Shown one piece after another: positions 2,476-59,969 of a stretch of 64,000 bases of DNA; position 1 is the stretch's first letter, and each line of letters begins with the position of its first letter. The notes under the pieces were generated by a model. That model searched no databases, had not been told where the DNA came from, and saw only the letters and a list, made by a program, of their open reading frames with translations. Both the position numbers and the translations under genes were made by a program. The stretch spans positions 1-64,000 of IMG/VR virus record IMGVR_UViG_3300042889_001272. The stretch is one strand, 5' to 3'.

Positions 2476-3021
2476 TTAAATAGTTTCTTCCCAAGGTCCA
2501 GGAAACAATCTTATTAAGATCATGATCCTAGTCTGATCACCATTATTGACAACTCTGTGCGGAGTTTTTACTCCCAATATGTATGGCTCATATGTTTCAG
2601 CTTCATATATTAGTTCACACTGGTCTTCGGTGTATCTAAAATATTGATGAGTCTTACCCTTATTGTTTACTTTGGCAATGGTATAATCAGAGTTTACTTT
2701 AAAAAAATTAATCCAAGTATTTTCACAGCCGATTATTGGTATATTTAAACTATGTTTAAAAGGACCACTGTCCATGTGATAAGTGCCGGCGTCTTTTCCA
2801 ACGGTTACGTTGACAGCAATCGAACCCACTGAATCGAACATTTTTTTACTTTTTAAAAAATCGCGTAGTGCGGCAACTTTGAGAAATATTTCTCTATTAT
2901 TTTCTATATAAGTTAATGTTGTTTTATCAAGTAAATATTCAGGTATTAATTTTAATACTTCTTGTTGTATCTCGTTGAGATTTTCAATGTGTACGGGTTT
3001 ATAAAAATCAGCAGTGTTCAT
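2476..3021 (-). CDS. Fe(II)/2OG-dioxygenase-like (AspH-type DSBH) protein
   Basis: YHMD...LNIP...PHRV...R motif pattern. Confidence 0.7.
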   Translation of the reverse strand: MNTADFYKPVHIENLNEIQQEVLKLIPEYLLDKTTLTYIENNREIFLKVAALRDFLKSKKMFDSVGSIAVNVTVGKDAGTYHMDSGPFKHSLNIPIIGCENTWINFFKVNSDYTIAKVNNKGKTHQYFRYTEDQCELIYEAETYEPYILGVKTPHRVVNNGDQTRIMILIRLFPGPWEETI

Positions 3022-3027
3022 AAAAAG

Positions 3028-3045
3028 TATTTATACCTATAAATA
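3028..3045. promoter_or_regulatory. Back-to-back T4-late-like promoters (TATAAATA on both strands)
   Basis: tatttata 3028-3035 lies 6 nt before the minus-strand ATG; tataaata 3038-3045 lies 5 nt before the plus-strand ATG. Confidence 0.65.
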
Positions 3046-3050
3046 TAATT

Positions 3051-3590
3051 ATGCAATTTATCAAACTTAATAAAAAATTTGATGTTAGTAGTTTTACAGA
3101 AACATCACTGATCAACGAATATGCCATCAATGGCAAGGGCATTGGATTCTATAACATCGACAATTACAATAAAGAATTGATGCTTTCAGTTATACCAGAG
3201 AGATTTAGAAAAGATTTCTTTGCAAGAGAAATGAAAATAAATTATAACATTCCTCCTCATACAGATAGCTACGTGTATGCTACTATAAATTTTTATGTCA
3301 AAGCCGTTGATTGCCAAACAAATTTCTTTAAGAAAGTAGATGCTAGCCTTGGAGTTAAAATGACCACTCAGACTACTGGCAGGACATTTAAAGAAGAAAA
3401 TTTAGAACACGCTGGAAGTTTTGTAGCAGAATCTGGAGATGCTTGGTTATTGGATGTGTCTAGCCCACACAGCGTTAAGAATCTAAAATCTAGTACTGTT
3501 GACAGAGTTGCTCTGGTATTACAATCAAGTAACTATACCTTTGATCAAGTACACAGTATGTTACAAGAAACTGGTTACGTCGACGATTAG
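3051..3590 (+). CDS. Fe(II)/2OG-dioxygenase-like protein
   Basis: PHTD...INFY...PHSV...R. Confidence 0.7.
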   Translation: MQFIKLNKKFDVSSFTETSLINEYAINGKGIGFYNIDNYNKELMLSVIPERFRKDFFAREMKINYNIPPHTDSYVYATINFYVKAVDCQTNFFKKVDASLGVKMTTQTTGRTFKEENLEHAGSFVAESGDAWLLDVSSPHSVKNLKSSTVDRVALVLQSSNYTFDQVHSMLQETGYVDD

Positions 3591-4138
3591 ATTATAAATT
3601 CCTGCAATCTAAGTTTCGCTTCTGCCATAGTAAGTCTTTTTTTTGTTATTAAATCAACCAATACCACAGTAATGCATAAACGATCTTCTTTTGTAGTAGT
3701 TACATTATGCGGACATCCTGCTTGCACTAAACTAGGATAACTCAATGGGCTACTTTCCGCCAAGTCGACCATATCTGATCTCCATGGTATATATTCGGTA
3801 TTGATCGGTGTTTTTTCTACTACGGCGGGCGCGGAAGATGTTTCTTTTACTTTATACCAATGCATTAGACTGCCGTGGCCGCCGTATATAAAGTTTATTT
3901 TAACGTAATCACCGCCCATGCAGTCTGTGTGGATTCCTTGTTTACTTAGGTTGGCATACGGACGAGAATAAAATGATTCCATGTACCAAATTTGTATGCC
4001 AAGATTTTTTAAAAAATTAATAAAATCAGGATTTATATTTTCATGATCAATGGGAGTTTGATATTTCTTTTTCAACTCGAGATGATCTATGATCGCTGGA
4101 TTAATATTTAAATTTAAATATACGTAATAATCGGACAT
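3587..4138 (-). CDS. Fe(II)/2OG-dioxygenase-like protein
   Basis: IHTD...KINF...PHNV...R; close paralogue of 32813-33346. Confidence 0.7.
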   Translation of the reverse strand: MSDYYVYLNLNINPAIIDHLELKKKYQTPIDHENINPDFINFLKNLGIQIWYMESFYSRPYANLSKQGIHTDCMGGDYVKINFIYGGHGSLMHWYKVKETSSAPAVVEKTPINTEYIPWRSDMVDLAESSPLSYPSLVQAGCPHNVTTTKEDRLCITVVLVDLITKKRLTMAEAKLRLQEFII

Positions 4139-4157
4139 AACTATATTTAGTCACTAA

Positions 4158-4186
4158 TTGACACAAACACCAAGATGTAGTATAAT
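4158..4186 (+). promoter_or_regulatory. Sigma70-type (early) promoter
   Basis: TTGACA-17-TATAAT, followed by the SD aaggag and ATG at 4205. Confidence 0.8.
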
Positions 4187-4204
4187 ATAACAAAGGAGAA
4201 AGTT

Positions 4205-4672
4205 ATGCCATGGATTGAAAACGTAGCCGCAGATGATATCCCAAAGAGATTTCATCACGAGCCTGGTGAGAACAGTATGCTGATCAGTATTGTCGATCCA
4301 GCAAGCTGGAGACCTTCACCTGCTCACAAGTTTAAAGAACAGCATAACTTTGAGTTCCTTGATATTGAAAAAAATGACTTTGCATTAGATGAAGCCATGC
4401 GTTGCAGTCAAGACCAGGCCAATGAACTTGTTCATTTGTTGCAACATGCCTTGGCCAATCGCATGAACGTTGTTGTTCATTGCTATGCAGGTATCTGCCG
4501 CAGTGGTGCAGTATGTGAAGTCGGAGTCATGATGGGCTTTGACGACACAAGACGATTCCGTAGTCCTAACTTGCTGGTCAAGCATCGCATGATGAAAGCC
4601 TTGGGTTGGACATATGATGAAGATGAGAAGCCAAACGTTGATGACTGGAGAACTTTTAAAAATGATGTATAA
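4205..4672 (+). CDS. Cys-based (tyrosine/dual-specificity-like) phosphatase
   Basis: VVVHCYAGICRS = HCx5R(S) P-loop. Confidence 0.8.
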   Translation: MPWIENVAADDIPKRFHHEPGENSMLISIVDPASWRPSPAHKFKEQHNFEFLDIEKNDFALDEAMRCSQDQANELVHLLQHALANRMNVVVHCYAGICRSGAVCEVGVMMGFDDTRRFRSPNLLVKHRMMKALGWTYDEDEKPNVDDWRTFKNDV

Positions 4673-4862: not shown

Positions 4863-4863
4863 A

Positions 4864-5331: not shown

Positions 5332-5345
5332 ACTAGGAGAATGAT

Positions 5346-8442: not shown

Positions 8443-8739
8443 TTATTCGCCTAATAATTCAACGGTGTTTGTGATACCATTTGATTCATTGTGTCTTATT
8501 CGAGCTACGCTATTAGCGTTTGTCGAGCTCAGTCCTTTAATTTCAAGATAAGCAGCTTCGTCTCGAAATACATAGTTTCTAATAATAGAGTTGGCATTGA
8601 GTTTAGTTTTACTAACGCTCAATAAACCCGGCAAACTTTTAAACCAAGACGCCCATGCGGCATGACCCGCAGGATTTGCATCGCTAAACCATGCCGCATT
8701 GGCTGGCTTTACTGTTGTTACTCTTACTTTATATGACAT
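8443..8739 (-). CDS. Small hypothetical protein (98 aa)
   Basis: Strong SD aaggaga, Ala/Asn/Ser-rich, followed by the palindrome. Confidence 0.75.
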   Translation of the reverse strand: MSYKVRVTTVKPANAAWFSDANPAGHAAWASWFKSLPGLLSVSKTKLNANSIIRNYVFRDEAAYLEIKGLSSTNANSVARIRHNESNGITNTVELLGE

Positions 8740-8761
8740 AAATGTCTCCTTTGATATATTA

Positions 8762-9418
8762 TTATTTATCTAAGTACGTTCTATTTAGCATAGTATGATT
8801 GTGATCCGTAGGTCCCCAGTCGCCGTCTGGGTGAAAGGCAATAACGGTCATACTACTATCAGTAGTACAGAAACGATGTCTTTCTTGTTCAGTTAAACAA
8901 AAGCTAATGCCAGTAACAAGCTCGTCTTCCTTTAAGTTGCCACTATCGCCGTGATGACTAATACCTTTACCGTCTATGACACAGCCTAATCGGATGCTGG
9001 GATGAGTGTGATAAGACTGTGTGATGCCCGGCGGAAAGAACAATAGATTCAAACTAGCGTCTCCCAGCCTAGCAGGATATACCAGTAAACTATCACTACA
9101 ACCGTCAATATAAGTTAATCTGCCCTTGGATTCTACCCAGCCCATAGTATCTGGTACGATGTATCCTAGTCTAACGATTACAAATAGTTTGTCAACGACG
9201 TCGACACTAACAGAGTCTCTTACGCCTAATCCGAAATATTGCCCTTTTTCCAGTGTATGTTTTTTGCCATCAATTGTGATTGTGGCTGTGCCGTAGCTGT
9301 AACCATACACTGAGCAGAATTTACAGAAATCTGGGAACGTGAATTGCTGATTTTCAAACATGTAGCCAGCTGATGGGTACATACTATTGTACAATTCTAA
9401 TTTTTTTCCATCTATCAT
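8762..9418 (-). CDS. Cupin-domain protein
   Basis: HTHPSIRLG...G.G and ERHRF cupin motifs. Confidence 0.7.
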   Translation of the reverse strand: MIDGKKLELYNSMYPSAGYMFENQQFTFPDFCKFCSVYGYSYGTATITIDGKKHTLEKGQYFGLGVRDSVSVDVVDKLFVIVRLGYIVPDTMGWVESKGRLTYIDGCSDSLLVYPARLGDASLNLLFFPPGITQSYHTHPSIRLGCVIDGKGISHHGDSGNLKEDELVTGISFCLTEQERHRFCTTDSSMTVIAFHPDGDWGPTDHNHTMLNRTYLDK

Positions 9419-16930: not shown

Positions 16931-17553
16931 TATAGTTGCACCTTTAAACGTTTTTCAAATTCTTGATTAACTCCAAATATTGTAAGTGCGGCAAGCCTAT
17001 CAGGATGATGGTTGAATTTTGTTTTTAGTCTTGCATCGAATGTATCTATTAAAATGTTATATCTATCAGTATCCTCTAAATTAAGAGCACTATGTATAAC
17101 AGCGTTATTAATTCTATAAATGTTGCCAAATTTCAATGGGTATATAACTTTTTCATCATCGTAGTAGCCATAGTTATAATTCACATCACTGTGTGTCAAC
17201 GGTACCAAGTATCTATTTGTTATTCTGTGTAAGAATCTGCCATCTGTGTGTTCATCCAAGACTTGTTTGGGTTTCAACATACTCACACTAACTGAGTTCA
17301 GTGGATCAATTTTGTATGTTTGTTGAATGTATTCAATGACTGTGAGAATAGCAGAATACAATGGCATTCTGCGCGAATCTGTTGGCGCTTGCATGAAATC
17401 CAGTCGCAACCAACTGTGTTCTTTGTTTACCAAATCTCTGTCTTTATAATTATAGTCATCGTCTGTTAATGCCAGTGAAATTTGTTCATTGACTGCATTT
17501 AGTAAATTATCAGGTACTGTTCCGAGAATTTGATACGCGGCATTAAAGTTCAT
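16930..17553 (-). CDS. AspH/beta-hydroxylase-like dioxygenase
   Basis: LKP...EHTD...RYLVPL...GNIYRINN..IHSA.N...R. Confidence 0.75.
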   Translation of the reverse strand: MNFNAAYQILGTVPDNLLNAVNEQISLALTDDDYNYKDRDLVNKEHSWLRLDFMQAPTDSRRMPLYSAILTVIEYIQQTYKIDPLNSVSVSMLKPKQVLDEHTDGRFLHRITNRYLVPLTHSDVNYNYGYYDDEKVIYPLKFGNIYRINNAVIHSALNLEDTDRYNILIDTFDARLKTKFNHHPDRLAALTIFGVNQEFEKRLKVQL

Positions 17554-17558
17554 ATAAG

Positions 17559-17589
17559 TATTTATAAATGTGTGCCGTGTTTATAAATA
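17559..17589. promoter_or_regulatory. Divergent pair of TATAAATA late-like promoters
   Basis: tatttata 17559-17566 and tataaata 17582-17589, each 5 nt from an ATG. Confidence 0.65.
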
Positions 17590-17594
17590 CAAAT

Positions 17595-18359
17595 ATGAAT
17601 AAATTTTATAACATACGCGATGATTTAAAATCATGGAATATTAATCAAATTAATTTGGAATTAGAAAAAGCAATTACCGCGGCTGGCATTAATTTTAAAC
17701 ATTGGAAAAGAACAGTTGAGCTCAAAGATGTAAAAGGACAATGGACACATAAAAGTCTCCATCATAATAGTTCAGCAGTTAACCCTGCTAGAATTACCAA
17801 TGGTGATGTTAATATAACTACTAATACGTCTATGTTCACTGAGTTAGATCAGCAATTATTCGGAGGCACTGGTCGCAGAGGGCGAGTCGTAGATGGAGTG
17901 GGCGTAGAAGAACCAGCAATGACTGATGATCAACTAGCAGAATTAAATCCTATTTTTAAAGGTACTGTACTAGAAGAATTGCATGAATTTGCTAAAGAAA
18001 AATTTCAAGCACCTGTAAGAATTCGTTGTCAAAATAGAACTGTCAGCGGCACAAGTCAAGGCTTATATTGGCATAAAGATGATCCTGTGGAAAATAGGTT
18101 TCATATTCCATTGTGGACCAATCCAGGACATCTTCTATTGTTTACAGAACAAAATTTTAAATGGAAAGCAGGCTTTGATCCAATAGAAGCCATGCAGCCA
18201 TTAGATGTAGTTGGACATTATATTCCTGCTGACGGACAGGTATATGAAATATATACTAAAGATTTTATGCATGCCGTGGCCAGTGTGGGTGTGGGTTGGT
18301 ATCAGCCGAGGGAAGAACAGACTAGATGTCATTTAAGTTTCTGGGTAGGAAAAAATTAA
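17595..18359 (+). CDS. AspH-like dioxygenase
   Basis: WHKD...RFHIPLWTN...MHAV...RCH. Confidence 0.7.
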   Translation: MNKFYNIRDDLKSWNINQINLELEKAITAAGINFKHWKRTVELKDVKGQWTHKSLHHNSSAVNPARITNGDVNITTNTSMFTELDQQLFGGTGRRGRVVDGVGVEEPAMTDDQLAELNPIFKGTVLEELHEFAKEKFQAPVRIRCQNRTVSGTSQGLYWHKDDPVENRFHIPLWTNPGHLLLFTEQNFKWKAGFDPIEAMQPLDVVGHYIPADGQVYEIYTKDFMHAVASVGVGWYQPREEQTRCHLSFWVGKN

Positions 18360-19653: not shown

Positions 19654-20228
19654 CCTAATGCTGCCGCAACTTGCTCAAAGTCTGGGTTAGTTGCAAATCT
19701 AAATGTAATCAAACATCTAGTACGATCAGTTACAGTGACCGCATGTGGCTGATTAACTGCAACCAAAGTGGGAGTATCGATAATTACTCTGTCAGCGACA
19801 TCCGGTATGTAATCGTCGTCGTCATCGCTCCAAATTAATTCCAAGTGTTTTCTAACTATACCATCTCGTCCCTTGACTGATGCTACTGAAATTTCGTAGT
19901 CTCCTGTGTACCATTCCATGTAGCTGTCATCGCAGTTAAGCAAAGGAATATTGATAGCACATTTAATACCCTGTGGAGGATCGTCGTTATTACAGTCCAA
20001 ATGTATGGGCTGCTGATAACCTCCAGGACGTCTAAATAATATACAATTATATAGACTGGGCAAAGCTGGGTAATTTTCTTTGAGATACCTGCCCAGAATA
20101 TATTGTGGTTTCTTTAAAAAATATAATTGCATTGCACCAAATTGCATGTCCTGCATTTCAGACAGGGCACAATTTTTAATTTCTTCTATTATAGAATCGG
20201 GTAAATTTAAAGTTTTAAAAAGTTTCAT
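19650..20228 (-). CDS. Fe(II)/2OG-dioxygenase-like protein
   Basis: IHLD...AINIP...PHAV...R...RF. Confidence 0.7.
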   Translation of the reverse strand: MKLFKTLNLPDSIIEEIKNCALSEMQDMQFGAMQLYFLKKPQYILGRYLKENYPALPSLYNCILFRRPGGYQQPIHLDCNNDDPPQGIKCAINIPLLNCDDSYMEWYTGDYEISVASVKGRDGIVRKHLELIWSDDDDDYIPDVADRVIIDTPTLVAVNQPHAVTVTDRTRCLITFRFATNPDFEQVAAALG

Positions 20229-20229
20229 A

Positions 20230-20799
20230 TCATATATTTAATATTGCGGGTAGGTTTTTCCATGGAGTAGTAACGGTTAAATTACTGCGACAACTAATTG
20301 TCCATCTAGGTTTATTCTTTATTTCCACAGAATGTAAAATATCTGTTCTGACTAAAGTAGGCTCTTTGCCTATAACTTTCCTGGCCGGCACCTGTTTATT
20401 ACTTACATCTACCAGTATGTACGGATACTCGATACCTTTATTATTTTTTCCAATTCTAATGTCACTGTCAGTATTAATATGATCATGCCATATCATTTCA
20501 CCATTAGGTTCGCCTATACACCAATTTAATGCGTTAGTCGCAATAGTATTTTTATCATACAAATCATAATGTGCTAATCTAGGATTACTATTAACTGCCT
20601 TGTAAAATAAAAAAACAGTGTCTATTTTAAAATTCAATCGACCGTGTACATATTCTATAAATTGAGATTTTAAGATTTCAGTAGAATAATAAAAAAATAA
20701 AAAATTATCTTTTTTAGTAATTTTAGGAAATACAAAATCTTCCTTTATAGCAAATTGTGCTCCTACTAAATTTGTGTCATAAAAATAATCAGTTGACAT
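20230..20799 (-). CDS. Fe(II)/2OG-dioxygenase-like protein
   Basis: AHYD...ALNW...PTLVRTDILHSV...R. Confidence 0.65.
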   Translation of the reverse strand: MSTDYFYDTNLVGAQFAIKEDFVFPKITKKDNFLFFYYSTEILKSQFIEYVHGRLNFKIDTVFLFYKAVNSNPRLAHYDLYDKNTIATNALNWCIGEPNGEMIWHDHINTDSDIRIGKNNKGIEYPYILVDVSNKQVPARKVIGKEPTLVRTDILHSVEIKNKPRWTISCRSNLTVTTPWKNLPAILNI

Positions 20800-21976: not shown

Positions 21977-22000
21977 ATTGCTTGTATTTATAAATATCGT

Positions 22001-23446
22001 TTAAATTGAATTTATTGTTATCAGGTACTTTTTTATAAATTCTTGTTTACGTCTGCGAAATTCGTCGCTGTTGTTGATTCGATCCTGATGCTGTGACATA
22101 ATTTCTTCATTGGTATATCCCAGTGTATGTAATGCTATGTGATTGAATCCTGCAAAGTTTAGACGTTTTCTCTGAGGATTTAATTTTTCAGCATAGGCCA
22201 GCACAGACTTTCGTTTCCAGGTGTCATTATACCATTGATTGTTTGAATCAAATTTAAAACCGTACTTGTCTGCATTGCGTTCGAATTCGCTGATATAACT
22301 TCGTTCATGTAGATTATTAGTGACCTGTAAGCCAAAGAATATCACATTTATCATGTGCTGATTCGCCCACAGTAAGCTACCTTGAAGATCATCTGCGGTT
22401 TCGCCTGGCAGTCCCACTATCAGTCCGCAATGAGCAGATATTTTATTTTTCCATATTTTATGAACTAGCTCTGGAACAAACTCACGGGCGCTTTTACCAC
22501 TCCAGCCCTTGCCTACAATTTTACTAGCAGTAGGATGTAGACTCTCTATGCCAAAGAATGCGCCGCGCAGTCCAGTCTCTGCCAGCTTGTCTGCCATGCC
22601 CTTGAATCTATGCACTAAGTCTGCTCTAATATAGGCTGCATATTCTATATTAAACGGCAAGCTTCTTGTGAGTTCTAAAAAGCTGTCTATCTTATATTCA
22701 CTGTCATTGAATGTGTCGTCCAGCATGATATAACTGGTAGTCTGCCACTTATTATAGTTGTTTTCTAGATATTTTTTTACAGAATCATTAGATTTTAAAT
22801 AATCAAATTTCTTTTTACCCAAATGGGGATACGCACAAAAACTACATTTGAAGATACAGCCTCGAGCAGTTTCCATAGGCAATACTTCGCCAGTCTGTAC
22901 ACAGTCTTCATCCTGCCACATAAAGTCACAACTTTGTATCTGGTAATTTTTGTTTATGGGATTTCTATAAGTCAGCTTATTCGTAGTGGGATTTATTTCA
23001 CGTTCAGGTTCTGATGCTTTTTTTGTCCAGTAATCCAGAACTTCCGCAAAAGTATCTTCACTTTCTCCTATGAACACACAGTCTATGTCTTCTATTCGTT
23101 TTCTCATATAACTACTGTGCGCTCCACCTAGTATTACTTTGATATCTGGATATTCTGCTTTGATTAGTTTTACCGCTTGATAGATGTTGGGAGGAATACC
23201 GTTGTCATATGTATAATAATGTTGTGACTCGTCGAACCAAAATGTACTACTCAGTGCCAAGCATATAGTATCAGCAGTGACAAAATTTTTAAATAGCTCC
23301 AGTAACTGAGTTGCAGTCCACTCTTGGCAAAAATCTATAACTCGACTGTTGTATCCTCGTTTTTTTAACTGATGTTTTAGTAGATAGGGACCTAACGCAC
23401 GTTGCGGAATAACTGAATAAATACTGTTTAGAAATATAACGTGCAT
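22001..23446 (-). CDS. B12-binding-domain radical SAM protein
   Basis: N-terminal Rossmann-like domain (VILGGAH, GESE), ETARGCIFKCSFC, DDTFN, FGIES, IVGLPGET. Confidence 0.88.
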   Translation of the reverse strand: MHVIFLNSIYSVIPQRALGPYLLKHQLKKRGYNSRVIDFCQEWTATQLLELFKNFVTADTICLALSSTFWFDESQHYYTYDNGIPPNIYQAVKLIKAEYPDIKVILGGAHSSYMRKRIEDIDCVFIGESEDTFAEVLDYWTKKASEPEREINPTTNKLTYRNPINKNYQIQSCDFMWQDEDCVQTGEVLPMETARGCIFKCSFCAYPHLGKKKFDYLKSNDSVKKYLENNYNKWQTTSYIMLDDTFNDSEYKIDSFLELTRSLPFNIEYAAYIRADLVHRFKGMADKLAETGLRGAFFGIESLHPTASKIVGKGWSGKSAREFVPELVHKIWKNKISAHCGLIVGLPGETADDLQGSLLWANQHMINVIFFGLQVTNNLHERSYISEFERNADKYGFKFDSNNQWYNDTWKRKSVLAYAEKLNPQRKRLNFAGFNHIALHTLGYTNEEIMSQHQDRINNSDEFRRRKQEFIKKYLITINSI

Positions 23447-23474
23447 GCCTTATTTATAGTGGATAAATATATTC

Positions 23475-24185
23475 ATGGAAACTTTAAATTATTGCTATCA
23501 CCAAAGTGACTTTAAATTCAGCGCAGAAGCTGAAAAATGGATACGTGATACTTATCACTATCCTTATTTAAATAAATTTGTAGCCTACGACAAGTATTCT
23601 ACTGCTAACAGCGAAAAAAATATTTTAAATAAAAAAATTACATGGCAAGGCACTAAGGCTTTGGAAGAACTTCGAGACTATTTGTCAAGTTGGGGGATTG
23701 CACGTGATTACGTTGGTAGTGAACTATGTGGCCCTGACGTTTTTATCAGTAACAGTCAGATACATGCACAACCTGGCTGGCCGCACATAGACGGACATAA
23801 ATGGGACAATATCAATCCCAATAAACGATTACCAGTATTAACACGGTTTAATGTGGTTATAGAATACAATCCAGATGATCCCATGCATTGGTGGGAGGAT
23901 GTAACTCCTGGGCATCCAATGGTTGGGCAAATCGATCATAATGTCAATGGCCATCGTAACAATCAATATCTTGCTATTAAAGGCGCAAACCATAAAGAAA
24001 AATGGAATAACCTAGGAACACCCAGTACGACAAAACACGGACTATATAAAAATCATTGCTCTGCATTTTTGCGGACAGACTGTGCTCATTGTCTAGATAT
24101 AAATAAACCAGGATTTAGATTGGTTGTTTCACTGGCATTAGACTGTACCCTAGAAGAATTATACAAACGTCGAGGCTTATTATAA
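23475..24185 (+). CDS. Fe(II)/2OG-dioxygenase-like protein
   Basis: PHID...RFNV...RTDCAH...R; ATAAATA 5 nt before the ATG. Confidence 0.6.
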   Translation: METLNYCYHQSDFKFSAEAEKWIRDTYHYPYLNKFVAYDKYSTANSEKNILNKKITWQGTKALEELRDYLSSWGIARDYVGSELCGPDVFISNSQIHAQPGWPHIDGHKWDNINPNKRLPVLTRFNVVIEYNPDDPMHWWEDVTPGHPMVGQIDHNVNGHRNNQYLAIKGANHKEKWNNLGTPSTTKHGLYKNHCSAFLRTDCAHCLDINKPGFRLVVSLALDCTLEELYKRRGLL

Positions 24186-27337: not shown

Positions 27338-27987
27338 ACTAACGTTAAGAAATCTACGACCAAATGTGTTCTAGGACTTGTGCCGTTGTTTTGTACTGAA
27401 TGCCGCATTAAATTATTAAAAATAAAACATTCTCCTAGATCAAAATGACGCTTTTCGCCATTGCACGTTATGTAGCTTTCGTTATTTGTTTCTAATACTA
27501 AATGAACTCTAGTAGTTTCTTCTACAAGTCGATGGCCATCTATATGACTTTTAATTTGTGTATTTGATGGCAGTGTGTTGATTTCCACTCCGTGTGTATA
27601 ATATTGTCGCTGATTGTAATTGTTCAATGCTGCCATCATTTTTGTAGCCAATGGCATAATTAGATCTCGTACATTACGACTAAACTCCATGCGTTCAATG
27701 CTGTTATCAAGTCCAAGATGCCAAAACAAGCCGGCCCAATTGGCATCAGTGTTTTCTTCAGGATTGATACAGCCATTTGCCAATCGTATATATTTAGATT
27801 CAGCGAAGTCGGCTCTTCCTTTGATGTTCGGAGTCAGTAAATGTTGTACTGCCGGATCAGTTATGTATGCTAAAAGATTGTTTATTTCTTCTTTTGCAAT
27901 ATCAACGGTCAATGACTGGAAAGGAACGTCTAGTTTGACATTGGATTTCAAATAATTGAGCGTTTTAAATAATAGTCCAAATTCCAT
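27334..27987 (-). CDS. AspH/beta-hydroxylase-like dioxygenase
   Basis: HID...RVHLVLETN...G...FNN...HSVQN.G...RTHLVVD. Confidence 0.8.
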   Translation of the reverse strand: MEFGLLFKTLNYLKSNVKLDVPFQSLTVDIAKEEINNLLAYITDPAVQHLLTPNIKGRADFAESKYIRLANGCINPEENTDANWAGLFWHLGLDNSIERMEFSRNVRDLIMPLATKMMAALNNYNQRQYYTHGVEINTLPSNTQIKSHIDGHRLVEETTRVHLVLETNNESYITCNGEKRHFDLGECFIFNNLMRHSVQNNGTSPRTHLVVDFLTLV

Positions 27988-28024
27988 AATATTATTTATA
28001 ACAATAAATAGACTACAGTATTAA

Positions 28025-28520: not shown

Positions 28521-28530
28521 TAATTTGAAG

Positions 28531-33346: not shown

Positions 33347-33358
33347 AAATATATTTAT

Positions 33359-33949: not shown

Positions 33950-33951
33950 CA

Positions 33952-34678: not shown

Positions 34679-34689
34679 GTAAATATATT

Positions 34690-35397
34690 ATGACATTCGA
34701 TACCAATGTACCCGGTTGGATGACATCATCAGATCTAGCCGTATTGCACAAGCTAGCAGGATTAGTTCCAAAATCTGGATCTATTATTGAAGTAGGATGC
34801 TTCTTGGGTAGATCAACTGATGCATTTTTCAATGGCAAGGATTCATCTGTTAAAATGACAGTGGTGGATTCGTTTCAGGTACATGGTGGATATGAAACTC
34901 ATCGTAATATATTTGCTAAAAAAGTTAATGAAAAAGGACAAGAATATATCGATGCATTTGGCAGTCAAGAACTTTATGATGCAGCCAAAGAATTAGCAAA
35001 TTCAACTGGAGATTGGTTAGCAGGATTTAAATATTGTGTGGGTCAAGATCTATTAGATGATATTAATTTACACAAATCTTATTTTAAAGATTTTAATCTA
35101 GATCCCAAGGGATATGATTTGGCATTTATCGATGCATCACATAAATTTGAAGATGTATTATTTGATATTTCAAAATTCATTACTAATCAAAAGACTTTAA
35201 TAGTCGGAGATGATTTTACTTGGGCACAACCCGGTGTTGCTAGGGCCTTAACAGAAGTAAGACGCGGTGATATAAATGGCAGATCAACAAAAAGGTTATT
35301 AATTGTACCTGAATGTAGTAAAATATGGATGTTAGTTCCAGTCGAAGGATACTGGAAAGAGCAGTTTAGAAAAAAAGATAGTTTCTTCTTCGAGTAA
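34690..35397 (+). CDS. Class I SAM-dependent methyltransferase (Methyltransf_24-like)
   Basis: PGWM, IEVGCFLGRST, VD.F, DLAFIDASH, GDDF...PGV. Confidence 0.85.
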   Translation: MTFDTNVPGWMTSSDLAVLHKLAGLVPKSGSIIEVGCFLGRSTDAFFNGKDSSVKMTVVDSFQVHGGYETHRNIFAKKVNEKGQEYIDAFGSQELYDAAKELANSTGDWLAGFKYCVGQDLLDDINLHKSYFKDFNLDPKGYDLAFIDASHKFEDVLFDISKFITNQKTLIVGDDFTWAQPGVARALTEVRRGDINGRSTKRLLIVPECSKIWMLVPVEGYWKEQFRKKDSFFFE

Positions 35398-35483: not shown

Positions 35484-35513
35484 AGTTTAAGAGCAATTTA
35501 AATAAATATCGTT

Positions 35514-36293
35514 ATGTCCTACAAACGAATCATCAATAATGCTCTTGCGTCTAACACGCAATATCTACCCTACGTACAACTCAGCGCCACGGCACTGGTT
35601 CTACTCTATGCATTCCTTTTACCACAAGTTGGTTTACTGTGGTTACTGAGTGTGCTGATGTATGTGGGCATAGGCGGCCTCGGCATCAGCATAGGCTTTC
35701 ATAGATTATTAACACATAAAAGTTTTAAGACTAGTAAATTCTGGGAATACTTTTGTGCAACATGGGGTGCCCTTGCATTCACAGGCAGTGCAATCGGTTG
35801 GGTGGGTATGCACAGGGATCATCACAAGTACAGCGACAAGCCTGGTGACCCACACAGTCCCATGGTCAGTGGTCCCAAGATGTTGGTAGCTGCCTATGAC
35901 TATGAGCCCAACAAGTGGAAAATACGACATTTGATTTTTGACAAGTATCATATCTTTATGCACAAGTGGTACTTTGGTTTGCTATTATTATGGACAATAT
36001 TCTGGGCTGTTATAGATCCTGTGTTGGCCATGCACGTTGTTGTCATCCCTGCGGTGTTCAGTGTTTGGAGCAGTACAACCAGTAACTACATGAACCACCG
36101 TTGGGGTTATAAGAATTTTGAAACCAGCGACAACAGTCGAAATCTTTGGATCAATGCTATATTCACATTTGGCGAAGGCTGGCACAACAATCACCATGCT
36201 CGACCAGGCAACTATGACTTTGGCAGTGGCACCAGTGGCAAGTGGTGGGAATTTGATCCCGCCGCCAGAGTCATTGAATTAATTAGACGATGA
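35514..36293 (+). CDS. Membrane fatty-acid desaturase (delta-9-like)
   Basis: HRLLTH, HRDHH, GEGWHNNHH. Confidence 0.92.
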   Translation: MSYKRIINNALASNTQYLPYVQLSATALVLLYAFLLPQVGLLWLLSVLMYVGIGGLGISIGFHRLLTHKSFKTSKFWEYFCATWGALAFTGSAIGWVGMHRDHHKYSDKPGDPHSPMVSGPKMLVAAYDYEPNKWKIRHLIFDKYHIFMHKWYFGLLLLWTIFWAVIDPVLAMHVVVIPAVFSVWSSTTSNYMNHRWGYKNFETSDNSRNLWINAIFTFGEGWHNNHHARPGNYDFGSGTSGKWWEFDPAARVIELIRR

Positions 36294-38446: not shown

Positions 38447-38490
38447 TCAAATTTATCTTCTGATGACTTGTGCATCTATATAAATATTGT

Positions 38491-39189
38491 ATGAGATCAT
38501 CGGAAGATAAAGAATTACTAGTGTCTAGATTCACTGATACTATCTATGTAGAAGAATTTCTCCAGCCTGAAGAAATCCAGTATCTAGTCCAACTGTTTGA
38601 TAACTCAAACGACAAAATTTATAAGAACACCGGACCCGTGACTTCTAATTCTATTATGAAAGATTCTATTTTGGAATCTATAGTAGAAAGACTCAGACCT
38701 TTAATTGGTGATTTTAAGATTTATTCTGCGGCATTCTTTAATGTAAAAACGCCGCATATCATACACAATGATGATGAGAAGTCATTTCCTTTGACTTATA
38801 AAGCAATTACATTGCCATTGAAATTAGAGTATTCTGTGGTCTCTACAGAGCTACCCAGTCTGTGTATCTTTGATCAGTATTACTTGGAAGGCCCGAGTAA
38901 ATTTTTTAATGGCTCCAATGATATTCCCACATATTATAATCAACAAATCTACGAATACTCCGAAGTACAAAACAAATCTTCAACCGGTATCAGGGTAGAT
39001 GACATACAGAGATATCTAACACATATAAAACCAAATTGGTTACATGGACTTAGTTTAAATTCAATACATGCATGGAAGCCAGGATCTGCAATTATATTCG
39101 ATGCATTAAAACTTCATTGTGCCAGCGACTTTAGACAGCACAGCATTATCAGCAAACTGGGCATTAGTATTTTTACATACACTGATTAA
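38491..39189 (+). CDS. Fe(II)/2OG-dioxygenase-like protein
   Basis: IHND...LPL...WKPGSAIIFD...LHCA...K; TATAAATA 4 nt before the ATG. Confidence 0.65.
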   Translation: MRSSEDKELLVSRFTDTIYVEEFLQPEEIQYLVQLFDNSNDKIYKNTGPVTSNSIMKDSILESIVERLRPLIGDFKIYSAAFFNVKTPHIIHNDDEKSFPLTYKAITLPLKLEYSVVSTELPSLCIFDQYYLEGPSKFFNGSNDIPTYYNQQIYEYSEVQNKSSTGIRVDDIQRYLTHIKPNWLHGLSLNSIHAWKPGSAIIFDALKLHCASDFRQHSIISKLGISIFTYTD

Positions 39190-40516: not shown

Positions 40517-40655
40517 ATTATAATTTATTATCTCTATTCAGAATACAAGATACACATTACGATAAATCAATGTCAATCTCACCGATACCGCCTGCAAAAG
40601 CCTGTTATTGCGATAAACGACATTGGAGATTCGGCTACCTTGAATAAATATCAGT

Positions 40656-41171
40656 ATGCATATACAGTTTAAATCAATTTACCCTAAATTCAAAGAAGTA
40701 TTGGATCAATGTATATATCTAGGCAAAGAATACGCTGATTGGCCGAATAACGAAGAAGGCCAGTTAGCTATTCAAACAGATGATCCAAATATAGATAACT
40801 GGACTTCTGGAATAGGAAAAAGTGTTGCAAAAACTCCCGAGTGGGAGCAACAATTTAGATATATTCAACCAAGTTTAATTGGCACGCCTGTAGATAGATA
40901 TATCAAATGGCTGGGTATTCCCGTTTATCGAACAAGAATTATGTTATCTAAATCTAAATCTTGTTACAGTGTTCATCGTGATTACAGTCCAAGATTGCAT
41001 CTCCCGTTGATAACTAATAAGCAATGCAATTTTTTAATTACAGATCCCATACAGTTTTTTCATTTGCCAGCCGATGGCAGAACAACTTGGGTAAACACAA
41101 CCATGCCCCATACTTTCATGAATGGCAGTTTAGAAAATAGATTACATCTAGTAATGATAACAAAGGAATAA
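40656..41171 (+). CDS. AspH-like dioxygenase
   Basis: RTRIM...CYSVHRD...RLHLPLITN...PADG...HTFMN...RLHLV. Confidence 0.78.
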
Positions 41172-56724: not shown

Positions 56725-56735
56725 TTTATTTTCCT

Positions 56736-58484
56736 TTATCTATATTGTAGGTTCACCAAATCTTGGTGTAATTTATCACTAGACAATTGACGCAAAACTT
56801 TTGCATTGTCTACATTCACTTGATTCTTGTAAATCTCTTTTGGTGCATAGAATGCTACATCAGGTATCATCATTGAATATGCTTGATATCCTGCGGGCTG
56901 TGTTGCCATGCCAGCAATATCCACACGTCCAGCCAGTTCATTTGGCTGTACATTTCTGTTTACAGATTCAGTTTTTTGTTCTTGTGCGTTATTACCTTGT
57001 AATATTGGGCGTTGTTCCATTGCGTCATTCAATGCTGAACGACCACCAATTTTAATACCCTCGTTTTGCGGTACTTCTATTTCTGGTTGTTTACTACTAT
57101 TTGTTGGTGCCTGCAAACTATACATATCAACTTGACCCTGCGACATGTTTGATGACGAAGACATACTAGGATCAGCAAATACACTTTGCGTTACTGGTCG
57201 TAAGCCACCGACATTGACTACACTAGTTTGTGATACACTAGCTACATTTACCACAGTCATTTGTGATTGACTGCTGGTTACTACTGTCGATCCAGTACTT
57301 GTACTAGACTGTGCCATACTGCTGGTAATGCTTTGTGTAGTTAATGTGCCTGCTACTGTTTCTGCTTGTTGCTGTGCTTGTTGTGCATCTTTGGCAGCGG
57401 CAGTTTCTGCAGCCTGTACAACAGACTTGGCCTCATTGCCTATTCTAGCTTGATTGCTACTAATCATACTTATAACATTGCCTAGACTAGGTCCCGTCTT
57501 ATCACTTGCTGTTTTATTATCACCTGCTGTTTTAACTTCACCTGCTCGAGGTTGACTACCGCCGCCCTGCGGAGGAGGTTGATTTGCTGGTGGAGGTGAG
57601 CCAGGATTATTGCCTGGTCCAGGAGCTCCGGGTGGTGGTGGTGGGCCTGCCATAGGTCCATCAGCAGGAGGAGGACTACCAAGCGGGGGTGGGCCACCAG
57701 GTGGTGGCGGAGCCGCTTCGTCAGGTGGCGGTGCCGGTCCAACGGTTTCAGGATTAACTACAACTGGATTTAGTTTGGCCATTGCATCGTTATAGCCTCT
57801 GCAACTAGGAGAGTATAGTGGATTGGTAGCACAAGGATCAACACTATATTTCAAACTAAAATTTACATTGATGATTTCCGGACCGTATGGTCCAACCCAA
57901 TAATTATTGTCTCTGCCAACAAATCCATACTGGGCATTGCCAACATTAGATACACTGTATGCGTTGGTAAAAGTTTTACTGTACTCAAAGGTTCTCCAAC
58001 CTTGTGTGTTATAGGACAAGTCCCAGTTGTAGTTTTCTACCACTTTTGAATTTGTATTGTTGTAGATGTTTACGTAAGCACTTAGAGTGTCGGTCATTCC
58101 GTTGTCCCAGCCGTTGCCGTTCTTGGCTTGAAAACTAAAATTGAAACCATTGACTTGCAATCCTGTACCACTGTTGGGCAATGCATTTTTAATAGCAACA
58201 GTTTGATTTAAGTCAGTTAATCCATATGAGAAGTTGATAACATTGCTGCCAACACCCCAGGCAGCAACTCTAGGCAATGGCCCGCAATATCCTGGATCAC
58301 CGCTTGCCCAGCAAGTTAGTGGTTCTCCAATTGTGCCGGCGTTTTGCCAAGTAGAGGTAGTACTGTTAGCCTGACTAGTAAAGTTAGTCAGGTTACCGGT
58401 CGTATCAACTTGTTGACTGTTAGAATAACTTGTGGACAAGAACGCCAAGGATAGCGCCAATGCCAATTTTCTTATAAGTATCAT
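56736..58484 (-). CDS. Exported Pro-rich/low-complexity phage protein
   Basis: Signal-like N-terminus, beta-rich domain, C..NPLYSP.C, poly-Pro and Ser/Thr tracts. Confidence 0.75.
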   Translation of the reverse strand: MILIRKLALALSLAFLSTSYSNSQQVDTTGNLTNFTSQANSTTSTWQNAGTIGEPLTCWASGDPGYCGPLPRVAAWGVGSNVINFSYGLTDLNQTVAIKNALPNSGTGLQVNGFNFSFQAKNGNGWDNGMTDTLSAYVNIYNNTNSKVVENYNWDLSYNTQGWRTFEYSKTFTNAYSVSNVGNAQYGFVGRDNNYWVGPYGPEIINVNFSLKYSVDPCATNPLYSPSCRGYNDAMAKLNPVVVNPETVGPAPPPDEAAPPPPGGPPPLGSPPPADGPMAGPPPPPGAPGPGNNPGSPPPANQPPPQGGGSQPRAGEVKTAGDNKTASDKTGPSLGNVISMISSNQARIGNEAKSVVQAAETAAAKDAQQAQQQAETVAGTLTTQSITSSMAQSSTSTGSTVVTSSQSQMTVVNVASVSQTSVVNVGGLRPVTQSVFADPSMSSSSNMSQGQVDMYSLQAPTNSSKQPEIEVPQNEGIKIGGRSALNDAMEQRPILQGNNAQEQKTESVNRNVQPNELAGRVDIAGMATQPAGYQAYSMMIPDVAFYAPKEIYKNQVNVDNAKVLRQLSSDKLHQDLVNLQYR

Positions 58485-59544
58485 CTATTTTTACCTCATC
58501 CAATTTTGGAATCTTATCTGGATTTGCATCCCAAGATGCTTTGGCTTGTTCACCGATCTTACCTTCATATGGGCACGGTGTTCCTGCGGCTAACATGGCA
58601 TCAAATACTCTGCGATCTTGACACATAGTGGCAACTGCGGCTACTTTCATGCCCATGTCATATAATGTTTTGGATAACTTTAATCTTTCGCAATTCATGT
58701 CCCGAACAGTGCCGCCCGAACTTACACCGAAAACTTGTGTCTGCACACTACCACTACTACCAGTACTACACAAATCAGCATTACCACCCGACAACATAGC
58801 AGGAGCCACTGCTGTTGGAGGAGGCTGAATAATACGTTGTGTAATCTCAGTGGAGTTGATATTTCGATTAGTCATGTCACCTGTCTGTACGTTTTGATTA
58901 ACGGCTGTACTAGCGTTAACATTATTATTAACATTATTACTTGTACTTGTACTTGTATTGACATTTCGATTTGTCATATCACCGGTGTTGACGTTGTTGT
59001 TGGTCGCAGTACTTGTGCTAACATTGTTATTATTGTTGGTGGCTGTGCTGTTGTTGACATTGTTGTTATTGTATGTCATTGTACCAGTATTTTCGTTCTT
59101 GTTAACATTGGTATTATTACTTGTGCTAGTACTTACATTGTTGTTATTGTATGTCATTGTACCAGAGTTGACATTGTTGTTATTGTATGTCATTGTACCA
59201 GAGTTGACATTGTTATTGTTAACAGTACTTGTGCCACTATTGATGTTGTTATTTGTGTTTACACTAGTGCTATTGTTAGTGTTGGTGTTTGCACTAGTAC
59301 TATTGACAGCGGCTGTACTTGTGCTGTTGCTGTTGCTTATAGTATTACTGTTAGAAGTAACTGTACTGGTACTGTTGCTGGTGCTATTGGTATCTACTAG
59401 TGATTTAGAATCATAGCTTCCTTGATTAATTAATGTGGCAGTACCGGTGGTTGTTCCACCTGTTGTGCCTGATGTGGTGGTTGTTTGTGCTGATACAGAA
59501 ATTGCAATGGCTGTCAAAGCAAATGTAACAAGTGTTCTTTTCAT
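58420..59544 (-). CDS. Exported Asn/Thr-rich repeat protein
   Basis: Signal peptide, NxGTMTYNNNNV repeats, Cys-containing C-domain (CERLKLSK...MCQD), C-terminal TM. Confidence 0.8.
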   Translation of the reverse strand: MKRTLVTFALTAIAISVSAQTTTTSGTTGGTTTGTATLINQGSYDSKSLVDTNSTSNSTSTVTSNSNTISNSNSTSTAAVNSTSANTNTNNSTSVNTNNNINSGTSTVNNNNVNSGTMTYNNNNVNSGTMTYNNNNVSTSTSNNTNVNKNENTGTMTYNNNNVNNSTATNNNNNVSTSTATNNNVNTGDMTNRNVNTSTSTSNNVNNNVNASTAVNQNVQTGDMTNRNINSTEITQRIIQPPPTAVAPAMLSGGNADLCSTGSSGSVQTQVFGVSSGGTVRDMNCERLKLSKTLYDMGMKVAAVATMCQDRRVFDAMLAAGTPCPYEGKIGEQAKASWDANPDKIPKLDEVKIDDTYKKIGIGAILGVLVHKLF

Positions 59545-59663
59545 GATCTTACTCCTATACCATTTAATGGCTTTTTAGTATTTAAAATAATATGCGGTCA
59601 GGTAAAGTACTATTAAAACTAATTGCGTATAATGGTTATACTGACTTTTTTTATAAATAGTCA

Positions 59664-59969
59664 ATGAAACATATTTTAATTTTTCTAACTTCTATGATGG
59701 CCATCACAGCATCGGCTCAACCGGCAACCACAAAAAAAGAAGTTTACTGCGATAAAACTGAAACAATGATTTCAGTTTTAAAAGGCCGAGACTATGAAGA
59801 ATCGCCCTTATGGTTTGGTACAGAAAAGGATAGTAAAGCATCAAACTATTCACTGTTTGTTAATCAAGAAACCAAAACCTGGACTATAATCCAATTCAAC
59901 AAAGAAACAGCCTGCGTTCTAGGCGCAGGCGAGGATTTCATCGTACTTTCCAAAAAATCATACATTTAA
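59664..59969 (+). CDS. Small exported hypothetical protein
   Basis: Signal peptide and Cys pair; TATAAATA 4 nt before the ATG. Confidence 0.65.
   Translation: MKHILIFLTSMMAITASAQPATTKKEVYCDKTETMISVLKGRDYEESPLWFGTEKDSKASNYSLFVNQETKTWTIIQFNKETACVLGAGEDFIVLSKKSYI

What the first reader, a model, noticed from the sequence alone, without database searches (positions are those of the whole stretch)
3021..59666. Leaderless late-gene cassette architecture: (TA)TAAATA 4-6 nt before the ATG, often as divergent pairs
Seen: the motif-to-ATG gap is 6 nt at 3021(-), 5 at 3051(+), 5 at 4138(-), 5 at 17553(-), 5 at 17595(+), 4 at 23446(-), 5 at 23475(+), 5 at 27987(-), 5 at 33346(-), 4 at 34690(+), 5 at 35514(+), 4 at 38491(+), 5 at 40656(+) and 4 at 59664(+). 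There is no room for an SD in these gaps. Three pairs are back-to-back within 30-45 bp. Sigma70-promoter genes, by contrast, have normal SD leaders. Known: TATAAATA is the T4 gp55 late promoter, with transcription starting a few nt downstream. Inference: the tailoring enzymes are late genes translated from leaderless mRNAs. About 12 bp of upstream DNA would make each a self-contained expression unit that can sit in either orientation.
Basis: partly seen in the sequence, partly recalled or inferred. Interest (0 to 1): 0.7.

Follow-up and report, generated by a model that had tools for sequence, protein, structure and literature searches.

The report
Leaderless late genes in a jumbo phage
In this uncultivated freshwater jumbo phage, about half of the T4-type late promoters (and several ordinary early promoters) sit so close to the start codon that the messenger should begin exactly at the AUG. 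This is a compact, conserved way to express genes without a ribosome-binding site, inferred from sequence only.

Summary
All 14 listed sites were confirmed. Genome-wide, TAAATA-N5-ATG occurs 24 times against 8.1±2.9 in simulations, and 16 of the 60 ATAAATA copies lie exactly 5 nt before an ATG.

- **Context:** the window is the first 64 kb of a 235.6-kb lake-water phage related to Atu_ph07, Phosso, PA5oct and the Rak2 group. It encodes a gp55-like late sigma factor.
- **Start-site geometry:** in T4 the box occupies -13 to -6, so a 5-nt gap puts +1 on the A of ATG.
- **Independent signs:**
  - The base before the ATG is T in 18 of 19 gap-5 sites.
  - Spacing is bimodal, at 4-6 nt or 17-28 nt with a GGAG leader.
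  - The arrangement is kept in a collinear relative of about 70% identity while the gap sequence changes.
  - Protein N-termini confirm the starts.
  - The architecture is not limited to tailoring enzymes; virion and baseplate genes use it too.
  - It is not limited to late promoters. Eight or nine TTGACA/TATAAT promoters are also leaderless, including one in the window (gene at 60013) and that of the sigma gene itself.
  - About 25 late promoters keep SD leaders.
- **Limits:** no transcript evidence could be obtained.
- **Precedents:** Thermus phages have mapped leaderless late transcripts, and ATAAATA is already a predicted late motif in this clade.

Verdict: a new variant of a known kind, of moderate interest.

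The parts
3019..3035 (-). Late box TATAAATA, 6 nt, then the ATG of the 181-aa gene 2476-3021. It is half of a divergent pair.
   Evidence: The pair is conserved in IMG/VR relative L061, where the gap is 5.
3038..3053 (+). TATAAATA, 5 nt, then the ATG of the 179-aa gene 3051-3590. It is the other half of the pair, with 29 bp between the two ATGs.
   Evidence: The N-terminus MQF.KLNKKF and the motif with gap 5 are kept in L061, 72% aa identity.
4136..4150 (-). CTAAATA, 5 nt, then the ATG of the 183-aa gene 3587-4138. It faces a sigma70+SD promoter (4158-4207, +) across 66 bp.
17551..17566 (-). TATAAATA, 5 nt, then the ATG of the Asp/Arg-hydroxylase-like gene 16930-17553. This is the first gene of a 15-gene minus-strand block.
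   Evidence: The orthologue in G001 has CTAAATA plus a 21-nt GGAG leader instead.
17582..17597 (+). TATAAATA, 5 nt, then the ATG of the 254-aa gene 17595-18359. It forms a divergent pair with 17553, 41 bp between the ATGs.
   Evidence: The G001 orthologue keeps TATAAATA-N5-ATG.
20226..20241 (-). TTAAATA, 6 nt, then the ATG of the 192-aa gene 19650-20228.
   Evidence: The G001 orthologue has TATAAATA-N6-ATG.
23444..23458 (-). TATAAATA, 4 nt, then the ATG of the B12-binding radical SAM gene 22001-23446.
   Evidence: The N-terminus M.VIFLNS is conserved in six IMG/VR homologues. The G001 orthologue is leaderless with gap 6.
23463..23477 (+). ATAAATA, 5 nt, then the ATG of the 236-aa gene 23475-24185. 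It forms a divergent pair with 23446, 28 bp between the ATGs.
   Evidence: The G001 orthologue (72% aa) keeps gap 5 with a different gap sequence.
27985..28000 (-). TATAAATA, 5 nt, then the ATG of the Asp/Arg beta-hydroxylase-family gene 27334-27987.
   Evidence: It is kept in the 95%-identical contigs L065-L067. The G001 homologue has ATAAATA-N5-ATG.
33344..33358 (-). ATAAATA, 5 nt, then the ATG of the 177-aa gene 32813-33346. The box abuts tRNA-Met (33359-33434, +).
34679..34692 (+). GTAAATA, 4 nt, then the ATG of the methyltransferase gene 34690-35397.
   Evidence: The N-terminus M.F.TNVPGWM is conserved in L063 and L064.
35502..35516 (+). ATAAATA, 5 nt, then the ATG of the 259-aa gene 35514-36293, just after tRNA-Pro.
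38479..38493 (+). TATAAATA, 4 nt, then the ATG of the 232-aa gene 38491-39189.
40644..40658 (+). ATAAATA, 5 nt, then the ATG of the 171-aa gene 40656-41171.
59652..59666 (+). TATAAATA, 4 nt, then the ATG of the 101-aa gene 59664-59969.
   Evidence: The G001 orthologue has AATAAATA plus a 19-nt GGAG leader.
59979..60015 (+). Sigma70-type promoter, TTGACA-N17-TATTAT, 5 nt before the ATG of the 191-aa gene 60013-60588. This is a leaderless early-type unit inside the window.
8737..8769 (-). Contrast case: the same late box ATAAATA with a 23-nt gap that contains AAGGAG, before the ATG at 8739.
4158..4207 (+). Contrast case: TTGACA-N17-TATAAT with an 18-nt gap that contains AAGGAG, before the ATG at 4205.

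Best explanation
The (A/T)TAAATA boxes are late promoters read by host RNA polymerase carrying the phage's gp55-like sigma factor. Like T4 late promoters they need only a -10-like box. In about 30 genes of the genome (17 in the window) the box ends 4-6 nt, mostly 5 nt, before the ATG. Transcription should therefore start on, or within a base of, the A of the start codon.

The resulting mRNA has no 5' leader and no Shine-Dalgarno sequence. It would have to be translated by the leaderless route, in which the ribosome binds a 5'-terminal AUG directly. That route rests on established knowledge and was not tested here.

The same trick is used at 8-9 sigma70-type early promoters. About 25 other late promoters keep a short SD leader. 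Because no -35 element is needed, two opposed late units fit into 28-41 bp.

- **Shown:** the motif positions, their statistics, their conservation, the presence of the sigma gene, and the start codons.
- **Inferred:** the transcription start, the late timing, and the mode of translation.
For: **Position and statistics**
- TAAATA-N5-ATG occurs 24 times against 8.1±2.9 simulated. 16 of 60 ATAAATA copies are at gap 5. 38 of 60 lie within 45 nt upstream of a same-strand start.
- Spacing is bimodal: 4-6 nt in 30 genes and 17-28 nt with GGAG in about 25 genes. Only three genes fall at 9-16 nt, as expected if a leader must either be absent or be long enough to hold an SD.

**Sigma factor and promoter type**
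- A gp55-like sigma lies at 212418-213290: phrog_12791 E 7e-73, phrog_234 E 6e-23, and T4 gp55 E 4e-8.
- T4's box spans -13 to -6 (PMC2988020), so a 5-nt gap puts +1 on the A.
- Nothing is conserved upstream of the box.

**Independent start-site signature**
- The base before the ATG is T in 18 of 19 gap-5 sites. Over all leaderless sites it is T in 27/38, against 33/100 in SD genes, p 9e-5.

**Conservation**
- In the collinear relative G001 (about 70% nt identity) the orthologues of 17595, 20228, 23446, 23475, 71220 and 83215 keep the box at 5-6 nt with changed gap sequences. Homologues of 1121 and 27987, at only 36-37% aa identity, do the same. The sigma70 cases 68678, 83610 and 136011 are kept too.
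- G001 has 13 of 23 ATAAATA..ATG hits at gap 5, G003 7 of 22 and G004 2 of 3. In G003 five such sites (four at gap 5, one at gap 6) open ORFs of 214-401 aa.

**The same box works at a distance**
- The orthologues of 17553 and 59664 in G001 have the box plus a roughly 20-nt GGAG leader.
- The virion gene beside the sigma gene has box plus SD leader in PA5oct, Atu_ph07 and Phosso, but box-N5-ATG here.

**Genes involved and start codons**
- Typical late genes use the arrangement: virion structural genes 71220 and 212337, and baseplate wedge gene 200355.
- Start codons are confirmed by conserved N-termini.

**Precedents**
- ATAAATA was already predicted as the late motif in CBB and GAP32 (PMC5259590).
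- Thermus phages give an experimental precedent for leaderless late transcripts that start 6 bp after the -10 box.
Against: - There is no RNA evidence. Metatranscriptome contigs laid on 1400-6000 and on the sigma locus came only from roughly 90%-identical relatives and did not cover the promoters.
- No gp33 or gp45 homologue was found in the 235-kb record, which is 66% complete. Activation may therefore differ from T4, and the start-site distance is borrowed from T4.
- The host is unknown, so efficient leaderless translation in it is assumed.
- T4 itself shows no such arrangement (2 of 12 at gap 5).
- Sites with gap 4 or 6 require start-site flexibility.
- A few listed sites, 1121 and 1462, are weak.
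Confidence: 0.74

Rival explanations
1. The boxes are late promoters, but most protein comes from longer read-through transcripts that start upstream. The ATGs would then be reached by SD-independent, A/U-rich (S1-dependent) or coupled initiation. Box-to-ATG adjacency would be a by-product of genome compaction.
For: Eight of the 30 leaderless-late sites are internal to same-strand gene runs. Many internal genes lack a clear SD in the crude calls, with 72 in the 'none' class.
Against: - Twenty-two of the 30 are first in their unit. In the divergent pairs any upstream promoter would have to lie inside the opposing gene.
- The strict 5-nt spacing, the T at -1 (18/19) and the near-empty 9-16 nt range are not expected from compaction alone.
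- The spacing is conserved in G001.
Confidence: 0.12
2. UAAAUA acts at the RNA level as a non-SD translation enhancer placed where an SD would sit. It would not be a promoter.
For: The box ends 4-6 nt from the ATG, close to the usual SD position (established knowledge). It is A/U-rich.
Against: - The identical box sits 17-28 nt upstream of about 25 genes that have their own GGAG at the normal place.
- Orthologues switch between the two layouts.
- The genome encodes a gp55-type sigma whose relatives recognise this very box.
- Divergent 28-41 bp intergenic regions contain nothing else that could be a promoter.
Confidence: 0.05
3. The pattern is a chance product of AT-rich sequence or of wrong start codons, with the true starts lying downstream behind an SD.
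For: The genome is 38% GC. The raw TATAAATA count in the window is not significantly above shuffles. Gene calls here are home-made.
Against: - The gap-5 peak is 5.4 sd above simulation, and control words show no such position bias.
- Conserved N-termini start at the proposed Met.
- The layout is conserved in relatives.
Confidence: 0.03

Closest known systems
T4 late transcription (gp55 sigma, TATAAATA box at -13 to -6, no -35 element)
   Same: - The box is the same.
- A gp55 homologue is encoded.
- There is no upstream conservation.
- Late units occur on both strands.
- The segment after the box is AT-rich.
   Different: - T4 late genes have SD leaders. T4 shows no gap-5 enrichment (2 of 12).
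- No gp33 or gp45 homologue was detected here.
- The sigma is of the longer 290-aa type, phrog_12791.
Predicted ATAAATA late promoters of the Rak2/GAP32/CBB/PA5oct jumbo-phage group (PMC5259590)
   Same: This is the same clade by DNA polymerase and sigma. The motif lies before structural genes. The gp55-like sigma is present without gp33 or gp45.
   Different: - The two papers on this group that were read (CBB and PA5oct) do not mention leaderless layout.
- Cultured relatives mostly keep SD leaders.
- Gap-5 counts are PA5oct 8/29, Atu_ph07 5/32, Phosso 0/11 and Vibrio 2.275.O 0/12, against 16/32 here.
- PA5oct gp262 and gp356 are possible individual cases.
Leaderless transcription units of Thermus phages (phiYS40, Lalka27a)
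   Same: Most transcripts begin at the A or G of the start codon, 6 bp after a -10 element. Late promoters have their own -10 consensus, and opposed late promoters share short intergenic regions.
   Different: The phages are unrelated and the host is of the Deinococcus-Thermus group (own knowledge). The late box is different (TAGGGT) and no gp55-type sigma is reported for them in that preprint. There the 5' ends were mapped; here they are inferred.
Classical leaderless mRNAs (lambda cI from PRM; abundant in Actinobacteria, Deinococcus and Caulobacter)
   Same: There is a 5'-terminal AUG with no SD, and the promoter -10 lies a few nt from the start codon. All 38 sites counted here have ATG, but the site search accepted only ATG; a separate scan found no convincing GTG or TTG case.
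   Different: Those are host or temperate-phage sigma70 promoters. Here a phage-specific late sigma class is involved as well, at about 14% of all genes and 29% of first-in-unit genes. This comparison rests on general knowledge and was not tested here.

Membership tests
T4-type late transcription system | A gp55-family late sigma factor is encoded. | tested here: met
   Genome 212418-213290: phrog_12791 E 6.7e-73, phrog_234 E 6e-23, and T4 gp55 by phmmer E 1.6e-8. Synteny with the SbcD/gp47-like gene matches PA5oct and Vibrio phage 2.275.O; Atu_ph07 and Phosso carry the same nuclease a little further downstream.
T4-type late transcription system | The promoter is an 8-bp TATAAATA-like -10 box without a -35 element, placed upstream of late (structural) genes. 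| tested here: met
   The logo shows A-TAAATA only, with no upstream information. 38 of 60 copies lie before same-strand starts. These include virion and baseplate genes.
T4-type late transcription system | A gp45 sliding clamp acts as activator and gp33 as co-activator. | tested here: not met
   There was no hit with T4 gp45 or gp33 (tblastn, phmmer --max) or with Pfam DNA_PPF. The record is only 66% complete and gp33 is poorly conserved. The CBB paper reports the same absence.
T4-type late transcription system | Transcription starts about 6 nt after the box. | not testable with these tools
   No RNA reads of this phage cover the promoters. The T at -1 and A at +1 fit that position.
Leaderless mRNA | The primary 5' end lies at, or within a few nt of, the start codon. 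| not testable with these tools
   This is inferred from promoter geometry only. Metatranscriptome contigs were uninformative.
Leaderless mRNA | There is no room for an SD, and the start codon is AUG. | tested here: met
   Gaps are 4-6 nt for late sites and 4-9 nt for sigma70 sites, and every site found has ATG. The site search accepted only ATG, so this is partly built in; a separate scan for GTG or TTG at the same spacing found no convincing case.
Leaderless mRNA | The annotated start is the true start of the protein. | tested here: met
   N-termini are conserved from Met1 in homologues of 23446, 3051, 34690 and 27987, and in several G001 orthologues. The remaining sites were not checked.

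The most novel reading that the evidence does not exclude
Leaderless initiation may be a deliberate expression class of this phage lineage. By fusing gp55-type and sigma70-type promoters to AUG codons, the phage would make a set of mRNAs independent of SD-anti-SD pairing. These would keep being translated, or be preferred, when the infected cell's SD-dependent initiation is impaired or altered late in infection. Alternatively, the layout reveals a host lineage with unusually efficient leaderless translation.

The 28-41 bp bidirectional units would be the smallest complete two-gene expression modules described for a T4-type system.
Probability: 0.15. Interest if true: 0.75.

Novelty: new variant of a known kind. 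Interest (0 to 1): 0.5.

Why it matters
If the starts map where predicted, this extends leaderless gene expression to the gp55/T4-type late transcription system and to a widespread group of uncultivated aquatic jumbo phages. This layout was not found described for gp55-type late promoters in the papers read here or in the literature searches.

- **Annotation rule:** a box 4-6 nt before an ATG marks both the true start codon and a late transcription unit. This would correct start calls such as 17568 to 17595 and 38470 to 38491, and probably that of PA5oct gp213.
- **Host biology:** it predicts something testable about the unknown host, or about translation in infected cells.
- **Engineering:** it offers very compact, orientation-free expression units of about 15 bp.

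It does not overturn any principle. Leaderless phage transcripts and the ATAAATA late motif are both known.

Tried and rejected
- **RNA evidence.** Runs holding the phage were searched. The metatranscriptomes hold only 24-38% of the capsid-gene words. Laying eight run-loads on window 1400-6000 and on the sigma locus gave short contigs, about 88-92% alike, from relatives. None lay over the promoters or over 2476-4138. No conclusion either way.
- **Host inference.** Capsid relatives in genome bins lie in MAGs labelled with at least seven unrelated phyla. These are mis-binned phage contigs and give no host signal. A motif scan of those whole MAGs was too mixed to use.
- **Phage-encoded helpers or antagonists of translation initiation.** No RegB, ribosomal protein S21 or IF3 was found.
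- **Mobile-cassette idea.** Leaderless late genes are not enriched among genes lacking an orthologue in G001.
- **Non-ATG leaderless starts.** No convincing GTG or TTG case was found. One possible GTG lies at genome 70439(-).
- **Function of the leaderless window genes.** PHROGs gave one hit of unknown function and nothing for the other nine.
- **Near-identical DNA in cultured phages.** Only tRNA-sized matches were found.
- **Weak sites.** 1462(+) and 1121(-), both gap 4 with TTAAATA, are counted by the scan but treated as doubtful.

Full report
**What the window is**

The 64-kb window is the first part of a 235,561-bp IMG/VR virus record. It is linear, CheckV rates it 66% complete, and its GC content is 38%. 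Its reads come from lake-water metagenomes.

The family-B DNA polymerase is closest to those of Sinorhizobium phage Phosso, Agrobacterium phage Atu_ph07 and Vibrio phage 2.275.O. More distant matches are the GAP32/CBB/121Q (Rak2-like) jumbo phages, at 41-48% aa identity. The record also carries a gp23-type capsid gene and a gp5-like baseplate hub. It is therefore a distant T4-like jumbo myovirus.

The window itself holds 20 tRNA genes. It also holds many small enzyme genes:
- Asp/Arg-hydroxylase-like oxygenases, TauD and cupin;
- two B12-binding radical SAM proteins;
- a fatty-acid desaturase, a GARS-type ATP-grasp enzyme and a methyltransferase.

**Checking the observation**

The bare number of TATAAATA copies in the window is not unusual: 13 against 8.5±2.8 in shuffles. 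Their position is what matters.
- In the whole record, TAAATA followed by exactly 5 nt and ATG occurs 24 times. The other gaps from 0 to 14 nt give 2-9.
- One hundred third-order Markov simulations give 8.1±2.9, with a maximum of 16.
- Twenty of the 24 open ORFs of at least 60 aa.
- Of the 60 ATAAATA copies, 16 sit exactly 5 nt before an ATG.
- 38 of the 60 lie within 45 nt upstream of a same-strand gene start, where 2.7% is expected. Control words of like composition give 8-13%.
- The three divergent pairs have 29, 41 and 28 bp between their ATGs.

**What the motif is**

A gp55-family late sigma factor is encoded at 212418-213290. It matches phrog_12791 at E 7e-73 and T4 gp55 at E 4e-8. It sits next to an SbcD/gp47-like gene; PA5oct and Vibrio 2.275.O have the same adjacency, and Atu_ph07 and Phosso carry that nuclease a little further downstream.

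ATAAATA has already been proposed as the late promoter of CBB and GAP32. Those phages also have a gp55-like sigma and no detectable gp33 or gp45 (PMC5259590). I likewise found no gp33 or gp45 here.

A logo of the 19 gap-5 sites shows information only in A-TAAATA. Nothing is conserved at a -35 position. This is the definition of a T4-type late promoter (PMC2988020).

**Why leaderless**

The T4 review numbers the first T of the box as -13, so the box spans -13 to -6. Five more bases then put +1 on the A of the ATG. Three features that were not part of the search pattern agree with this.
1. The base just before the ATG is T in 18 of 19 gap-5 sites and C in the other one. This is the pyrimidine(-1)/purine(+1) pair that RNA polymerase prefers at start sites. 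Over all leaderless candidates it is T in 27 of 38, against 33 of 100 in SD genes (p 9e-5).
2. The distance from box to ATG is bimodal. It is 4-6 nt in 30 genes and 17-28 nt, with a GGAG in between, in about 25 genes. Only three genes fall at 9-16 nt. This is what one expects if a leader must either be absent or be long enough to hold an SD.
3. Every site found has ATG. This is weak support, because the site search accepted only ATG and 95% of SD genes also use ATG. A separate scan found no convincing GTG or TTG case at the same spacing.

**Conservation**

A 141.7-kb IMG/VR contig (G001) is collinear with genome positions 5-96 kb at about 70% nucleotide identity.
- Orthologues of 17595, 20228, 23446, 23475, 71220 and 83215 keep the box 5-6 nt from the ATG, while the gap sequence differs. 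More distant homologues of 1121 and 27987 (36-37% aa identity) show the same layout.
- The sigma70-type cases 68678, 83610 and 136011 are kept too.
- G001 has 13 of 23 ATAAATA..ATG hits at gap 5. The more distant G003 has 7 of 22 and G004 has 2 of 3.
- In G003, five such sites (four at gap 5, one at gap 6) open ORFs of 214-401 aa.
- The 3021/3051 pair is kept in a contig with 72% aa identity.

Two orthologues in G001, those of 17553 and 59664, carry the same box with a roughly 20-nt GGAG leader. The virion gene next to the sigma gene has box plus SD leader in PA5oct, Atu_ph07 and Phosso, an 11-nt gap in the Vibrio phage, and box-N5-ATG here. The box therefore works independently of its distance to the ATG. 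This argues for a promoter and against an RNA-level ribosome-binding signal.

Start codons are supported by N-termini conserved from Met1.

- **Not only late promoters.** The leaderless layout also occurs at full TTGACA-N16-18-TATAAT promoters. Eight or nine of them lie 4-9 nt from an ATG: 60013 in the window, then 66316, 68678, 83610, 128512, 136011, 137979, 214319, and 212418, which is the late-sigma gene itself. The other sigma70-type promoters have leaders of 13 nt or more, most of them carrying a GGAG-type SD.
- **Not only tailoring enzymes.** Virion structural genes (71220, 212337), a baseplate-wedge gene (200355) and an HNH endonuclease gene (200965) use the layout.
- **How common it is.** By my crude gene calls, about 14% of 280 genes and 29% of 101 first-in-unit genes are leaderless candidates.
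- **No cassette signal.** Leaderless late genes are not enriched among genes missing from G001. The mobile-cassette idea therefore has no specific support.

**Comparison with known systems**

T4 shows no enrichment: 2 of 12 hits at gap 5. The cultured relatives give:

| Phage | ATAAATA..ATG hits at gap 5 |
|---|---|
| This phage | 16 of 32 |
| PA5oct | 8 of 29 |
| Atu_ph07 | 5 of 32 |
| Phosso | 0 of 11 |
| Vibrio 2.275.O | 0 of 12 |

(All.) In PA5oct, two of the four gap-5 positions I looked up coincide with annotated starts: gp262, a structural protein, and gp356. A third lies 5 codons inside gp213. The PA5oct transcriptome paper reports only sigma70-like promoters and does not mention leaderless mRNAs.

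Experimentally mapped leaderless late transcripts are known in Thermus phages phiYS40 and Lalka27a. There the starts lie 6 bp after a distinct late -10 box, and opposed late promoters share short spacers. By contrast, phiKZ and AR9 have no leaderless transcripts.

The finding is therefore a new variant of a known kind: a gp55-type late system fused to start codons.

**What could not be shown**

No RNA of this phage covers the promoters. The host is unknown. No phage gene for RegB, S21 or IF3 was found. The transcription start, the late timing and the leaderless mode of translation therefore remain inferences.

Noticed in passing
genome 212382-212420 (L012:934-972), outside the window: The late-sigma (gp55-like) gene is itself preceded by TTGACA-N18-TATTAT, 6 nt and ATG. 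The switch to late transcription therefore appears to depend on a leaderless early-type mRNA. PA5oct, Atu_ph07, Phosso and the Vibrio phage have leaders at the same gene.
   Followed up: partly
window 345-743, 1171-1428, 2396-2472, 28437-29283, 31722-31936, 33359-34025, 35407-35483: There are 20 tRNA genes in the window, all on the + strand, and several lie behind sigma70-type promoters. Leaderless late units abut tRNA genes at 33346/33359 and 35483/35514. A homologous methyltransferase in contig L063 also follows a tRNA-like 3' end.
   Followed up: partly
window 5938-27987: There is a dense set of oxygenase, radical-SAM and other enzyme genes: TauD, cupin, two Asp/Arg-hydroxylase-like, two B12-rSAM paralogues, a fatty-acid desaturase and a GARS ATP-grasp. 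Their substrate is unknown and most neighbours have no family hit.
   Followed up: partly
genome 135976-141700 (L005), outside the window: There is an array of about ten near-identical sigma70-type promoters (TTGACAnAAATTG...TATAAT) before very small ORFs, like the early host-takeover regions of related jumbo phages. Some are leaderless (136011, 137979) and most have SD leaders.
   Followed up: no
L037-L057 (genome contigs): Capsid relatives at 66-78% aa identity lie on contigs of up to 335 kb in MAGs labelled Neomarinimicrobiota, Crocinitomicaceae, Gammaproteobacteria, Haliscomenobacter, Polynucleobacter, Rickettsiales and others, from marine and fresh water. These look like phage contigs binned into bacterial genomes, so the group is widespread.
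   Followed up: partly
PA5oct NC_071039: 144985, 49602, 180252-180267: ATAAATA-N5-ATG coincides with the annotated starts of gp262 (structural protein) and gp356. For gp213 the annotated start lies 5 codons upstream of such an ATG and overlaps the box, so it may be mis-set.
   Followed up: partly
window 17568 vs 17595, 38470 vs 38491, 33394 vs 33346: The longest-ORF start calls fall inside or upstream of the promoter box. The box-N4/5-ATG rule picks the downstream ATG. At 17595 the G001 orthologue supports the rule, since it too starts at an ATG 5 nt after its own box, though 3 codons further upstream in the alignment.
   Followed up: partly
window 21974-21992, 26908-26938; genome 164235, 169432: A few boxes lie 8-20 nt from the ATG with no recognisable SD. 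These would give very short or SD-less leaders, and they fit neither main class.
   Followed up: no
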